A stretch of DNA of 63,579 nucleotides, the filler included, from Octopus bimaculoides (lineage: Eukaryota): assembly GCF_001194135.2 (NCBI RefSeq). It is 12 parts of 11 records of this genome, joined end to end, with 100 filler letters (N's around TTAATTAATTAA, not from the genome) between each part and the next. Parts side by side here need not be neighbours in the genome. Positions count along the whole stretch, not along the records: positions 21,262 to 23,132 come from NW_026435647.1; 11 more parts are not named here. One strand, written 5' to 3'. A program made the position numbers and the translations under genes. Positions 21,021-25,110 of the stretch are shown piece after piece; within the stretch, counting starts at the first letter, position 1, and every line of letters starts with the position of its first letter. The notes under the pieces are model-generated. The model saw nothing but the letters and a program-made list of their open reading frames with translations. It did not search any database and had not been told where the DNA came from.

Positions 21021-21322
21021 ACATATACACACACATACATCAAAGGCAGGTTAACTAGCAAGTTAGTTTTTGTTTGTGGCAGATGTTCAGGTGCAATAAA
21101 GACTGCAAACAAACAGGAAACAACTTCTATCTCATTCCAGGGTGAAAAACTAGAGGTAGTCNNNNNNNNNNNNNNNNNNNNNNNNNNNNNNNNNNNNNNN
21201 NNNNNTTAATTAATTAANNNNNNNNNNNNNNNNNNNNNNNNNNNNNNNNNNNNNNNNNNNNTACATACATACATGCATACATACATGCACACATACGCAC
21301 ACACACATACACATATGTATTT

Positions 21323-22970
21323 ATGCCATTTTCGCCGTTTAGAGGATACCCACATGCCATAAGAAGTACTGTGTGTAGAGCTATNNNNNNNNNNCGTTTA
21401 GAGGATACCCACATGCCATAAGAAGTACTGTGTGTAGAGCTATACCAAGGAAAACCTGCACAGGTATTTTAAAGACAACTTTTAAAGACACACTTAAAAA
21501 GATNNNNNNNNNNNNNNNNNNNNNNNNNNNNNNNNNNNNNNNNNNNNNNNNNNNNNNNNNNNNNNNNNNNNNNNNNNNNNNNNNNNNNNNNNNNNNNNNN
21601 NNNNNNNNNNNNNNNNNNNNNNNNNNNNNNNNNNNNNNNNNNNNNNNNNNNNNNNNNNNNNNNNNNNNNNNNNNNNNNNNNNNNNNNNNNNNNNNNNNNN
21701 NNNNNNNNNNNNNNNNNNNNNNNNNNNNNNNNNNNNNNNNNNNNNNNNNNNNNNNNNNNNNNNNNNNNNNNNNNNNNNNNNNNNNNNNNNNNNNNNNNNN
21801 NNNNNNCTATCAATTTGATATCCTGTATCATCTTTCATTCTTAGAATAAAATGAGTCCAAAGAGTGGCCTTGCTCTCCTCCTGCTACCGCTATTGTTATG
21901 TCTCCGCCTCCAGCTTCTGCACAGATTAATACGCTCACTCCTTCCCAAAACATAAGNNNNNNNNNNNNNNNNNNNNNNNNNNNNNNNNNNNNNNNNNNNN
22001 NNNNNNNNNNNNNNNNNNNNNNNNNNNNNNNNNNNNNNNNNNNNNNNNNNNNNNNNNNNNNNNNNNCAGCGAAGGCCACAGGCCCATAGGCACTGTCTCT
22101 TTCTTCCAAACACATGTACCCTTGATGCAATTCTCAGGCCCAAATAGCGTCACACAATATTACAAATTNNNNNNNNNNNNNNNNNNNNNNNNNNNNNNNN
22201 NNNNNNNNNNNNNNNNNNNNNNNNNNNNNNNNNNNNNNNNNNNNNNNNNNNNNNNNNNNNNNNNNNNNNNNNNNNNNNNNNNNNNNNNNNNNNNNNNNNN
22301 NNNNNNNNNNNNNNNNNNNNNNNNNNNNNNNNNNNNNNNNNNNNNNNNNNNNNNNNNNNNNNNNNNNNNTCTAAATTAATTACTCCATAATCAACAAGAC
22401 GATTATGACGTAACAACGAGCGCTTATTGAATATCTTTTCACTTTTCACTTCTCTTAGCTATCCAATTGACGTNNNNNNNNNNNNNNNNNNNNNNNNNNN
22501 NNNNNNNNNNNNNNNNNNNNNNNNNNNNNNNNNNNNNNNNNNNNNNNNNNNNNNNNNNNNNNNNNNNNNNNNNNNNNNNNNNNNNNNNNNNNNNNNNNNN
22601 NNNNNNNNNNNNNNNTTCAGCCGCTGTATTTGCATACCTGACGGCGAAATTGTCTTTACAGATTTCCATAAGATTTTATTTCCTGATATGCCAGAATATG
22701 ACCCCAAAACAATTTTTGCTCCCCAAAAACTTAAATTCCATGATTGCCCCGAAGAGAAACCAATTTTCACCATAGATCACCATAACGTCAAACGCCATTT
22801 CATTGTCGAAGACATAAGTTGGTTAACATTGCAAACTTTTCCTGATCCAGATATTACTGAAATAGAACTGCCTAAAGTTATCTCAAACGAATGGAAACCA
22901 GAAAAAGCCAAAGTATTTTGCCCCAGCCGCANNNNNNNNNNGGCCCACTTAAACGGTAAGGATTGAAGTT
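21323..22970 (+). other. Fragmentary coding-like block of unknown origin (possible endogenous viral or orphan element)
   Basis: Open plus-strand frames between N-runs: MPFSPFRGYPHAIRSTVCRAIPRKTCTGILKTTFKDTLKK (21323-21503, across a duplicated 10-N join); YQFDILYHLSFLE-stop; MSPPPASAQINTLTPSQNI; SEGHRPIGTVSFFQTHVPLMQFSGPNSVTQYYK; and 105 open codons FSRCICIPDGE...KAKVFCPSR (22616-22931). No microsatellites, no family I recognise. Confidence 0.45.
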
Positions 22971-25110
22971 TTCTGAATTATAACCAACGCAACTATACAC
23001 AAACACAACACATATCGCATACAAATTCACATTAACAAAACCGAACAGTACACAAGCACACATATATACACACACATACAAACTTACATATACACACACA
23101 TACACATACACACTCATTTCACACACACATATNNNNNNNNNNNNNNNNNNNNNNNNNNNNNNNNNNNNNNNNNNNNTTAATTAATTAANNNNNNNNNNNN
23201 NNNNNNNNNNNNNNNNNNNNNNNNNNNNNNNNCCCCCACAAAAAAAAAGAATTATTACATTGTTTTTAAAATCTTCATTTCCATAAACTACTTCACGACC
23301 AAAAATCAATTGATGGAGTGTTTCACAGTTTGTCTGGTAAAATATAAAATATGTATGATGAAGTCATTTCCACTGTTCATCATACATAATTCATTCTTTG
23401 CTGATTCTCGTTAGTTTATTCCCAAAAGGGAGAACATCTTATTTTGGAATCCATTTTGTAGTTTAGCAATCCTTGAACTATTTAAAAAAAAATTTAAGTT
23501 TCTTACCAATTCACTCAGCAAAGTTTTCTTATTATGTTACTTATGATCAGTTTCGTCCAAGATTTTTTCTTTTTTGCTAAACTTTTGTTGAAACCCACCA
23601 AATTTTCGTCCCTAAACCCTTCATTTCTCAATCATTCCCTCTGTTCTCTCTAATATTAAAATTTGCTTCCACACAAACGTTGAGCTTAGTGTAACCTAGA
23701 TCGCTTTTATTGCTCTCTCAACTATTCTCGATTTCATTGTTACTTAACATGCTACTCTTAATTTCTTTTCTCTGTATACATCTTTCCTACTCCAACACAC
23801 CTTTATTTCTTTTGTTATGAACAACCTTTCATCCCTCTATGTCTCTTTGAATTTTCTTCATGATTTCATCTAGATTCAATATATCACCTATGTATTTTTT
23901 CAGTCAGCTTCACGTGTGCCATGTTGTTTCATACTAAACTGGATTTCTTTCTATGAAAATATCTTCTGTTGCTTAAATTATTGTTAAGATCCTGCTACGG
24001 TTTTTAGATATATTGTAAAAATATTCATATCCATTAACTACTTCATGCTGAGTGTATTTGTTGAATCCAATCCCGCTTGTTACGTAGCCTTCCACAGTGA
24101 GTATAAGACATTGTGGCACAGCCGTTTTGGCGCTGCTAGTTTGGCATCACTGAGTCGATGCTGGCTGATTAGATAATTTAATGTTAGTTGGTTTTAAATG
24201 TTTTGTTCCTTTTTAAAGTCTCTCTCTCTCTCTGCGGTTCGGCAAAAGTGACCGTTAGAATAAGTACTAGGCTTACAAAGATTAAGTCCTGGAGTCGATT
24301 TGCTCGACTAAAGGTGGTGCTCCAGCATGGCCACAGTCAATTGACTGAAATAATTAAAAGAGTATTCAAATTTCAAGAATGTGAGGCAGGAGGGAACAGC
24401 CAAGTTCTGTTCATTCTGGCACTTTATGCTTATATGTAGACTGGTTGTTTTATTTTCTTAAAATATCTTGCATCTCTTTCTTACAAATCGTCAAGCTTCC
24501 GACACTTTGAAATTTCCTTTCGTAATTGTTTAGCCAACTTATCCTTGAATGGAAAATATATCTTTCTGTGAATGTCACTTGAGTTTCTCTAGTTTGTTTA
24601 CCTTTGGTTACAAATCATATGACGTTGTGGAAGCAATCAACTTTGGTAGATACCAATTTTCATTTTGAAGTTTCAATCAGTCAAGCGATTTTTTTTTTTA
24701 CCTTTTCTAACTTTAGACTTTTTCTTTACTGCTATTTTCTGTATCAAATTTGATGTAACCACCTTTTGTTTATTTGTAAATGTTTAACTATTGACAGCTG
24801 CTTGTAGATTTTCCTAAATCATTCAAAATTTAAATTTCATTATAGCTTGTTCGCCTTCCATTCTTTCATCTATGTATTTTACTTGTAGTCCTAAACACTG
24901 CTTATTTCAACATTTCAATTCTGTTTCTTCAGTTACACTCACATTTATTACAATTTTTATTGAAATGTTTCTTTATGGAAAGATTTTAAAAGTAATTTCA
25001 ATTTTGATGACGATAATTTCTTCAACAAAATTTCTTTCTTATTCACAGCATATTTTACATTCATTGTTGTTTTTTTTCTGTCTTTTTCAACCAGTTTTAT
25101 TGCTATTATT

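What the first reader, a model, noticed from the sequence alone, without database searches (positions are those of the whole stretch)
21323..22970. Orphan, gap-ridden coding block: candidate endogenous virus or undescribed element
Seen: a ~1.7-kb island between two scaffold joins, without the microsatellites and SINEs found elsewhere, broken by many short N-runs. It has several open plus-strand frames, including 105 uninterrupted codons (FSRCICIPDGEIVFTDFHKILFPDMPEYDPKTIFAPQKLKFHDCPEEKPIFTIDHHNVKRHFIVEDISWLTLQTFPDPDITEIELPKVISNEWKPEKAKVFCPSR). One ORF ends ...SFLE-TAA and an ATG follows 1 nt later. No introns are evident and I recognise no RT, transposase or host motif. Inference: compact intronless gene packing plus poor assembly fits a DNA-virus or Polinton-like insertion, or a low-coverage foreign sequence. 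The fragment at 22370-22472 has stops in all plus frames, so it may be decayed or intergenic. It sits at the CpG-domain boundary.
Basis: partly seen in the sequence, partly recalled or inferred. Interest (0 to 1): 0.7.

Follow-up and report, generated by a model that had tools for sequence, protein, structure and literature searches.

The report
Small lineage-restricted orphan gene, not virus
Inside a badly assembled, gap-ridden stretch there is one real small protein gene without introns, known otherwise only from one unnamed related organism; nothing points to a virus, and the other "open frames" come from reading across assembly gaps.

Summary
The piece holds 1,095 sequenced bases in seven fragments of 102-316 bp. 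The 105-codon open frame (22616-22930, +) is real and is a gene. A full HMMER scan of 1.84 billion proteins gave one hit (E 6e-12, 40% identity). It is a 140/141-aa protein on four ~900-bp Logan contigs from runs SRR11869384/85/90/91.

Those contigs are collinear with window fragments D, E, F and G, non-coding flanks included, and gap sizes agree. That settles order, orientation and continuity for 22067-23132.

The start codon lies just inside gap 22474-22615. The stop is TAA at 22957-22959. All five nucleotide-level indels against the relative are multiples of three, and an unconstrained frame would stay open with P~0.01. Constraint is weak (dN/dS ~0.66), and the upstream non-coding blocks are better conserved than the coding sequence.

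The remaining "coding block" is not supported. The short fragments' plus-strand open frames fit chance. The "139-aa ORF" is mostly N. The first 10-N gap is an unmerged 49-bp contig overlap.

There is no match to Pfam, PDB, PHROGs, IMG/VR, JGI metagenomes or GTDB genomes, and no terminal repeats. AlphaFold gave no confident fold (pLDDT 34-35).

Best reading: a fast-evolving, taxonomically restricted host gene with a compact promoter-like upstream region. Function and organism remain unknown.

The parts
21262..21315 (.). (TACA)n/(CA)n microsatellite bounding the piece on the left
   Evidence: TRF rows with periods 2, 4, 8 and 12. Direct-repeat family D1. The Rfam mir-297 hit of 45.9 bits is far below the gathering score of 90, so it is a low-complexity artefact.
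21336..21443 (.). Assembly artefact: the same 49 bases are written on both sides of the 10-N 'gap' 21385-21394 (an unmerged contig overlap). Fragments A and B are one continuous sequence.
   Evidence: The tail of A equals the head of B exactly over 49 nt. Family D2 has 100% identity at spacing 59.
21807..21956 (.). Fragment C, unplaced and unexplained. It has no stop-free frame and no homologue, and its joins to the neighbouring fragments are untested.
   Evidence: Only a chance-level alignment to the related locus (67% over 43 nt).
22125..22166 (+). Conserved block D, the best-conserved stretch of the locus (39/42 = 93% identical to the related locus). It is either non-coding or the end of an upstream reading frame. 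In the relative two AATAAA hexamers follow it.
   Evidence: The related contigs start exactly here, so homology further upstream cannot be seen.
22371..22473 (+). Conserved upstream non-coding block E, which looks like a promoter (81/102 = 79% identical). The perfectly conserved sub-blocks are TTATGACG (22403-22410), TCACTTTTCACTT (22439-22451) and GCTATCCAAT (22458-22467, with CCAAT at 22463-22467). The relative has TATATAA about 30 nt further on and the ATG about 70 nt after that. In the window those positions fall in gap 22474-22615.
   Evidence: Alignment, motif positions, stops in all plus frames. Naming the motifs as CRE half-site, IRF-like AAGTGA repeat and CCAAT box is from general knowledge and was not tested.
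22616..22959 (+). Coding sequence of the orphan protein, about 120 aa in full. There are 105 sequenced codons at 22616-22930, then assembly gap 22932-22941, then the last five codons and stop TAA at 22957-22959. The start codon and about 5 codons lie inside gap 22474-22615. No stop or frameshift is seen in the sequenced part.
   Evidence: alignment begins at residue 6 of the relative; dN/dS 0.66. P~0.012 of staying open without constraint; nucleotide-level indels of 6, 3, 3, 63 and 3; fragment G aligns across the relative's stop codon.
22960..23031 (+). 3' flank, homologous to the relative's 3' flank (66/87 = 76% over 22943-23031) and running into the microsatellite. No AATAAA is seen.
23045..23129 (.). 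(CA)n-type microsatellite bounding the piece on the right. The related contigs L002 and L003 end in a similar array at the equivalent place.

Best explanation
Fragments D to G (22067-23132) are one continuous chromosomal locus of the host. It carries a small (~120 aa), intronless, taxonomically restricted ('orphan') protein-coding gene on the plus strand, with its own compact upstream control region.

Shown:
- The reading frame is conserved in a second organism.
- Its start and stop are at homologous positions.
- Indels respect the frame.
- The non-coding flanks on both sides are homologous.

Inferred:
- It is transcribed from a TATA/CCAAT-type RNA polymerase II promoter. The conserved part of that promoter is block E (22371-22473).
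- The product is a soluble, acidic, proline-rich and largely disordered cytoplasmic protein. It has no signal peptide or membrane span, and it has a conserved pair of cysteines near the N-terminus that could be a lipid-anchor or metal site.
- It evolves fast under weak purifying or partly diversifying selection, as lineage-specific immune, stress or reproductive genes typically do.
- The conserved TGACG and tandem AAGTGA-like motifs make inducible (stress or immune) expression the most likely regulatory mode. This last step is a guess from motif resemblance.

For: 1. Homology. One hit in 1.84e9 representatives, E 5.9e-12, 40% identity; BLASTP 1e-19; a cluster of 4 allelic variants.
2. Collinearity, non-coding DNA included. 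D maps to L001 3-44 at 93%, E to 252-356 at 76-79%, F to 482-839 at 69-75%, and G to the stop and 3' flank at 76%. Gap sizes agree.
3. Coding constraint. P = 0.003-0.015 for the open frame by shuffling. P~0.012 that 105 codons stay open at the observed 35% divergence without constraint. All five nucleotide-level indels are multiples of 3: 6, 3, 3, 63 and 3. The stop codon is homologous.
4. Single-exon CDS. The relative's ORF runs from ATG to TAA uninterrupted. An in-frame TGA lies 4 codons upstream of the ATG, with no AG in between.
5. Promoter-like anatomy in the relative. Conserved block at -204 to -100 from the ATG, CCAAT at -110, TATATAA at -76.
6. Protein features. Net charge -5/-6, 11% proline, maximum 19-residue hydropathy 0.9-1.0, so no membrane span. 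pLDDT 34-35.
7. Host-like context. (CA)n arrays flank the locus in both organisms.
Against: - dN/dS is 0.66 and differences fall 43/33/33 over the three codon positions, with no third-position excess. Substitution patterns alone barely separate this from neutral drift.
- Among the four related haplotypes, non-synonymous differences outnumber synonymous ones in five of six pairs.
- There is no evidence of transcription or translation. The library type and species of SRR11869384-91 are unknown.
- The promoter reading rests on motif resemblance. In the window, the TATA and start-site region falls in a gap.
- The conserved GTAAGG that overlaps the stop codon could also be a splice donor.
- Only two lineages are available, so constraint is estimated from a single pairwise comparison.
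- The low pLDDT may reflect the shallow alignment rather than true disorder.
Confidence: 0.6

Rival explanations
1. The ORF is a remnant or cargo gene of an unknown endogenous virus or mobile element that entered before the two lineages split, or entered each of them separately.
For: The protein has no relatives in cellular annotation. It is intronless and short, with a self-contained promoter-like region. Assembly around it is poor, as often happens at repeats. Fragments A-C and everything beyond the piece are unexplored.
Against: No similarity to IMG/VR contigs with a single sequence or a profile, nor to PHROGs, Pfam or PDB. No inverted or terminal repeats. Only one ORF is supported, so there is no gene packing. 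Only one cluster of four near-identical variants exists in the collection, which does not look like a multi-copy family. Flanks on both sides are homologous between the two organisms, microsatellite included.
Confidence: 0.08
2. The frame is not translated. The region is a conserved non-coding or lncRNA locus, or a dying or very young gene whose frame happens still to be open in both lineages.
For: dN/dS of 0.66, no third-position excess, and mostly non-synonymous polymorphism. No confident fold. The flanking non-coding blocks are better conserved than the frame itself.
Against: The frame is unlikely to stay open without constraint (P~0.012). Five of five indels are multiples of three. Start and stop positions are homologous. 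41 invariant columns cluster in motifs such as EDISWL, PEEK and W.PEK...FCP.
Confidence: 0.17
3. The frame is one exon, first or only coding, of a larger spliced host gene. The conserved GTAAGG over the stop codon would be a 5' splice site, and block D would belong to the same or an upstream transcript.
For: GTAAGG is conserved at the stop in both organisms. Block D is open in plus frame 1 and 93% conserved.
Against: In the relative an in-frame stop lies 4 codons before the ATG with no acceptor AG in between. Block E has stops in all plus frames. Six conserved bases within a 76%-identical flank are not significant. No downstream exon can be seen before the microsatellite.
Confidence: 0.1
4. 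The piece is a mis-scaffolded contaminant or foreign low-coverage sequence (bacterial, symbiont or laboratory).
For: Very fragmented assembly, and no annotated homologue.
Against: No relative in 185,579 prokaryotic species genomes or in JGI metagenomes. The (CA)n/(TACA)n microsatellites and the eukaryote-type TATA/CCAAT arrangement are not prokaryotic. A second, independent data set carries the same locus with microsatellite flanks.
Confidence: 0.05

Closest known systems
Taxonomically restricted ('orphan') protein-coding genes of animals
   Same: Short, single-exon and acidic or disordered, with no detectable homologue outside a narrow lineage. It evolves fast (dN/dS 0.66), the frame is kept in at least two lineages, and it has its own simple promoter.
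   Different: This is a category, not a family. The specific protein family here is undescribed: no Pfam, PDB or literature match. Expression has not been shown.
Endogenous viral elements, Polinton/Maverick and adintovirus-like insertions
   Same: Intronless ORF without cellular homologues, sitting in a poorly assembled region.
   Different: No hallmark gene, no terminal inverted repeats, only one supported ORF, no viral relative, and flanks shared with a second organism. The resemblance is limited to 'unknown intronless ORF'.
Small inducible genes driven by CRE/ATF, IRF-type (AAGTGA repeat) and CCAAT/TATA promoters
   Same: Block E conserves a TGACG half-site, a tandem AAGTGA-like repeat (read on the minus strand) and a CCAAT box. 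In the relative the CCAAT box sits at the usual distance from a TATA box.
   Different: This is motif resemblance recalled from general knowledge only. No binding, induction or expression data exist, and the organism is unknown, so the factor repertoire cannot be checked.

Membership tests
Polinton/Maverick, adintovirus or other endogenous DNA virus | At least one hallmark gene (protein-primed DNA polymerase B, retroviral-type integrase, jelly-roll capsid proteins, packaging ATPase, maturation protease) | tested here: not met
   No Pfam hit for the 105-aa frame or its 141-aa relative at E<=10 apart from one chance-level match. No PDB sequence hit. No IMG/VR relative. This applies only to the 1,095 sequenced bases; 776 bases are N.
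Polinton/Maverick, adintovirus or other endogenous DNA virus | Several closely packed intronless genes | tested here: not met
   Only one ORF is supported. The other plus-strand frames are at chance level (3 observed against 1.8 expected, P = 0.25) or are read through N-runs.
Polinton/Maverick, adintovirus or other endogenous DNA virus | Terminal inverted repeats and target-site duplication | tested here: inconclusive
   No inverted repeat of 14 nt or more in the piece. The ends of any element could lie in gaps or outside the piece.
Transposable element (DNA transposon or retroelement) | Transposase, reverse transcriptase or integrase domain; many dispersed copies | tested here: not met
   No such domain. 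Only one cluster of four near-identical sequences in about 15 billion proteins, each on one or two contigs. Conserved blocks are absent from the metagenome and viral collections.
Taxonomically restricted (orphan) protein-coding gene | Reading frame conserved between lineages, with signs of selection on translation | tested here: met
   E 5.9e-12 homologue. Homologous start and stop. 5/5 indels are multiples of three. P~0.012 of staying open if unconstrained. dN/dS of 0.66 alone is only weakly below 1.
Taxonomically restricted (orphan) protein-coding gene | No detectable homologue outside a narrow lineage | tested here: met
   Exhaustive HMMER over 1.84e9 representatives gave 1 hit. A profile search of 5.8e9 clusters found the same cluster only. 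Pfam, PDB and PHROGs gave none. The taxonomic breadth itself is unknown because neither organism is named.
Taxonomically restricted (orphan) protein-coding gene | Transcribed and translated | not testable with these tools
   No expression data are available. The library type of the Logan runs is unknown, and no paper mentions the runs.
RNA polymerase II TATA/CCAAT promoter | CCAAT box about 60-100 nt and TATA box about 30 nt upstream of a mapped transcription start | tested here: inconclusive
   In the relative, CCAAT is at 346-350, TATATAA at 380-386 and the ATG at 459 in L002 (456 in L001). In the window the CCAAT at 22463-22467 is conserved, but the TATA and start region is in gap 22474-22615. 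No start site has been mapped.

The most novel reading that the evidence does not exclude
The D-G locus is a domesticated or resident gene of an as yet unknown endogenous element, viral or mobile, retained in at least two lineages. Alternatively it is a lineage-specific, fast-evolving immune or stress effector switched on through the conserved CRE-like and IRF-like upstream motifs. Either way it would found a protein family with no described relative.
Probability: 0.12. Interest if true: 0.5.

Novelty: new member of a known kind. Interest (0 to 1): 0.3.

Why it matters
It is a clean, small example of a taxonomically restricted gene. It has an undescribed ~120-140-aa protein family with just two known lineages, and its regulatory flank is better conserved than its coding sequence. 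If expression is confirmed, it adds one gene to a poorly annotated genome. It also gives a tractable case for studying how young, fast-evolving genes are maintained.

For the scan, the practical lessons are negative. Frames read across N-runs, and 10-N placeholder gaps (one of which here hides a 49-bp overlap), can create the look of compact gene packing. An intronless ORF with no homologue in a bad assembly is not in itself evidence of a virus.

Tried and rejected
- Word-indexed protein searches with the 105-aa frame and with the 42-aa minus frame of fragment C found nothing.
- An exact-sequence look-up of the 34-aa ORF in fragment C found nothing on record.
- Pfam, PHROGs and PDB by sequence or profile gave nothing above chance.
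- IMG/VR viral contigs with a protein, a profile and a conserved DNA pattern gave nothing.
- JGI metagenomes gave nothing with the profile or the D-block pattern, and GTDB prokaryotic genomes gave nothing with the profile.
- Rfam on the piece and on the related contigs returned only sub-threshold microsatellite artefacts.
- AlphaFold2 on the 5-sequence alignment and on the full-length relative gave pLDDT 35.4 and 33.8. I therefore ran no fold search, because its matches would be meaningless.
- Literature searches for the SRA run numbers and for conserved peptide words found no relevant paper, so the organism behind SRR11869384-91 stays unidentified.
- Considered and rejected: the duplicated 49-mer as a biological repeat (it abuts a 10-N placeholder and is 100% identical, so it is an overlap), and the mir-297 hit (45.9 bits against a gathering score of 90, on a microsatellite).

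Full report
**What is physically there.** The piece 21262-23132 consists of seven sequenced fragments:
- A 21262-21384
- B 21395-21503
- C 21807-21956
- D 22067-22168
- E 22370-22473
- F 22616-22931
- G 22942-23132

N-runs separate them. Fragment sizes of 102-316 bp with estimated gaps are what a low-coverage short-read scaffold looks like. The piece is bounded on both sides by (TACA)n/(CA)n microsatellites (21262-21315 and 23045-23129).

**Gap tests.**
- The 10-N 'gap' 21385-21394 is an unmerged overlap. The 49 bases before it are identical to the 49 after it. A and B are therefore continuous, and 49 bases are written twice.
- Gaps 22169-22369 and 22474-22615 are bridged by homology, described below. 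Order, orientation and approximate spacing of D, E and F are correct: 201 N against ~207 bp in the relative, and 142 N against ~106 bp.
- Gap 22932-22941 is again a nominal 10 N. In the relative the corresponding stretch is about 17 bases. That length class keeps F's frame and leads into the last five codons and a TAA at 22957-22959, homologous to the relative's stop. The continuation '...AHLNGKD*' in the mechanical ORF list is an artefact of the placeholder length.
- Gaps 21504-21806 and 21957-22066, the joins B-C and C-D, remain untested.

**Is the open frame more than chance?** F is stop-free over all 105 codons in one frame, while the other five frames carry 1-10 stops. A fully open frame in any of the six frames occurs in 0.3% of mononucleotide shuffles and 1.5% of first-order Markov simulations.

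The other 'open plus frames' are not significant. The six short fragments show 3 stop-free plus frames against 1.8 expected (P = 0.25). Counted on both strands there are 7 against 2.7 expected (P = 0.016). I attribute that excess to the microsatellite-bearing end fragments and the duplicated 49-mer, though I did not test this separately. The '139-aa ORF' ending in SFLE is mostly N, so the TAA-A-ATG juxtaposition in fragment C carries no information about gene packing.

**The homologue.** The word-indexed search found nothing. The exhaustive HMMER scan of 1.84 billion cluster representatives returned exactly one protein, P0001 (141 aa, E 5.9e-12, 40% identity). BLASTP between the two gives 1e-19. 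Its 90% cluster has four members of 140/141 aa. All come from Logan assemblies of four runs of one series (SRR11869384, -85, -90, -91), on contigs of 907-966 bp. A profile search with all five sequences found no further member among 5.8 billion clusters.

The four contigs are 96% identical column-wise. They differ by a handful of substitutions and small indels in patterns that look like recombining haplotypes of one locus.

**Collinearity.** The contigs match the window well beyond the ORF:
- D 22125-22166 aligns to contig positions 3-44 at 93% (39/42).
- E 22371-22473 aligns to 252-356 at 79% (81/102).
- F aligns to the ORF at 68-74%.
- G 22943-23031 aligns to the stop codon and 3' flank at 76% (66/87), running into a (CA)n array in both.

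D-G is therefore a single locus shared by two organisms, non-coding DNA on both sides included. That is expected for an inherited chromosomal locus. It is not expected for a contaminant or a recent insertion.

**Gene structure.** In the relative the ORF runs uninterrupted from ATG (456 in L001) to TAA. An in-frame TGA lies four codons upstream, with no AG in between, so it cannot be extended upstream by an acceptor there. The window peptide aligns from residue 6 of the relative. The window's start codon must therefore lie about 12-15 nt inside gap 22474-22615.

Counting the hidden ends, the window protein is about 120 aa. It lacks a 21-residue acidic segment present in the relative.

**Evidence for and against coding constraint.** For constraint:
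- A translation-blind nucleotide alignment gives five indels of 6, 3, 3, 63 and 3 nt, all multiples of three.
- Starting from the relative's ORF, unconstrained substitution at the observed divergence leaves 105 codons open in only about 1.2% of simulations.
- Start and stop are homologous.
- 41 columns are invariant and cluster in motifs: FTD, DP..I..P.K..F...PEEK, EDISWL, FPD, W.PEK...FCP.

Against constraint:
- Nei-Gojobori estimates are pS 0.44, pN 0.33 and dN/dS 0.66, with differences spread 43/33/33 over the three codon positions.
- Among the four haplotypes, non-synonymous differences (1-10) exceed synonymous ones (0-2) in five of six pairs. They concentrate at the two termini.

Together this describes a translated but weakly constrained or partly diversifying gene.

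**The upstream region.** The non-coding blocks are better conserved (7% and 21% divergence) than the coding sequence (about 32-35%) and than synonymous sites (44%). This points to selection on regulatory sequence.

The perfectly conserved sub-blocks of E are TTATGACG, TCACTTTTCACTT and GCTATCCAAT. In the relative the CCAAT box is followed after about 30 nt by TATATAA and after a further 70 nt by the ATG. That is the layout of a compact RNA polymerase II promoter with a 5' UTR of about 40 nt.

Reading the motifs as a CRE/ATF half-site, an IRF-type AAGTGA tandem (on the minus strand) and an NF-Y box comes from general knowledge. It is a lead, not a test. In the window the TATA and start region lies in a gap.

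**The protein.** It has no signal peptide or membrane span (maximum 19-residue hydropathy 0.9-1.0), net charge -5/-6 and 11% proline. A conserved C-x-x-C-like pair sits near the N-terminus, and a conserved FCP lies near the C-terminus. AlphaFold2 gives pLDDT 35.4 with the 5-sequence alignment and 33.8 for the full-length relative alone. No usable model exists, so I ran no fold search. The low confidence is compatible with disorder but may also reflect the shallow alignment.

**Tests of the virus, element and contaminant readings.** All were negative:
- Pfam: only a 12.9-bit chance match against a cut-off of 25.9.
- PDB by sequence and by profile.
- PHROGs: E>0.1.
- IMG/VR by protein, by profile and by a conserved DNA pattern.
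- JGI metagenomes by profile and by DNA pattern.
- 185,579 prokaryotic species genomes.
- Rfam: only sub-threshold hits on microsatellites.
- Inverted repeats: none.

None of these collections samples eukaryotic giant or integrated viruses exhaustively, and 41% of the piece is N, so an unknown element cannot be excluded. No positive evidence for one exists, however, and the shared flanks argue against a recent insertion.

**Verdict.** The finding contains one real feature: an undescribed, lineage-restricted, intronless small protein gene at 22616-22959 (start in the preceding gap), with conserved promoter-like DNA at 22371-22473 and a highly conserved block at 22125-22166. The framing as a multi-gene 'coding block' of viral origin is not supported.

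I put 0.6 on the host orphan-gene reading, 0.17 on 'conserved but untranslated or decaying', 0.10 on 'exon of a larger spliced gene', 0.08 on 'endogenous element' and 0.05 on 'contaminant'.

Orphan genes are common in poorly sampled animal lineages, so the surprise to a specialist is modest. The regulatory flank being more conserved than the coding sequence is the only mildly unusual aspect. Interest 0.3.

**Limits.** Neither organism is identified. No paper cites the run numbers, and conserved peptide words occur in no paper. There are no expression data. Only one pairwise comparison is available.

Noticed in passing
window 21336-21384 and 21395-21443: The same 49 bases are written on both sides of a 10-N gap. 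This is an unmerged contig overlap, so 10-N runs in this assembly are placeholders, not size estimates.
   Followed up: yes
window 22125-22166 (L002 3-44; AATAAA x2 at L002 89-100): This is the most conserved stretch of the locus (93%), better conserved than the coding sequence. It is open in plus frame 1. In the relative that frame continues to a stop at 111-113, and two AATAAA hexamers lie nearby. It could be the 3' end of an upstream plus-strand gene or a distal regulatory element. All four related contigs start at exactly this point, so homology further upstream is unknown.
   Followed up: partly
L001-L004 ORFs (about 456-881): The four haplotypes of the relative differ mostly by amino-acid changes (1-10 non-synonymous against 0-2 synonymous per pair). 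The changes cluster in the first 10 and last 15 codons, while the middle is invariant.
   Followed up: partly
window 22616-22930 versus L001 456-878: A 63-nt (21-codon) acidic segment (NEEDIYEPKYIPEKKYSADTD-like) is present in the relative and absent from the window's gene. The indel is in frame.
   Followed up: partly
The following 34-codon ORF begins like a signal peptide (MSPKSGLALLLLPLLLCL...). It has no homologue and no exact record. The fragment's placement is unverified and its meaning unknown.
   Followed up: partly
window 21262-21324 and 23047-23105: Rfam mir-297 and other miRNA models hit the (CA)n/(TACA)n arrays at 27-46 bits, against gathering scores of 80-100. These are low-complexity artefacts.
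   Followed up: yes
window 22370-23132 versus 21395-22168: CpG observed/expected is 0.8-2.1 in fragments E-G (five CpGs in the 104-bp block E) against 0.3-0.5 in fragments B-D. Counts are small. It may mark a small unmethylated promoter patch.
   Followed up: no
window 22955-22960; L001 878-883: GTAAGG overlaps the stop codon in both organisms. It is a possible 5' splice site, which leaves open a spliced isoform that reads past the stop.
   Followed up: no
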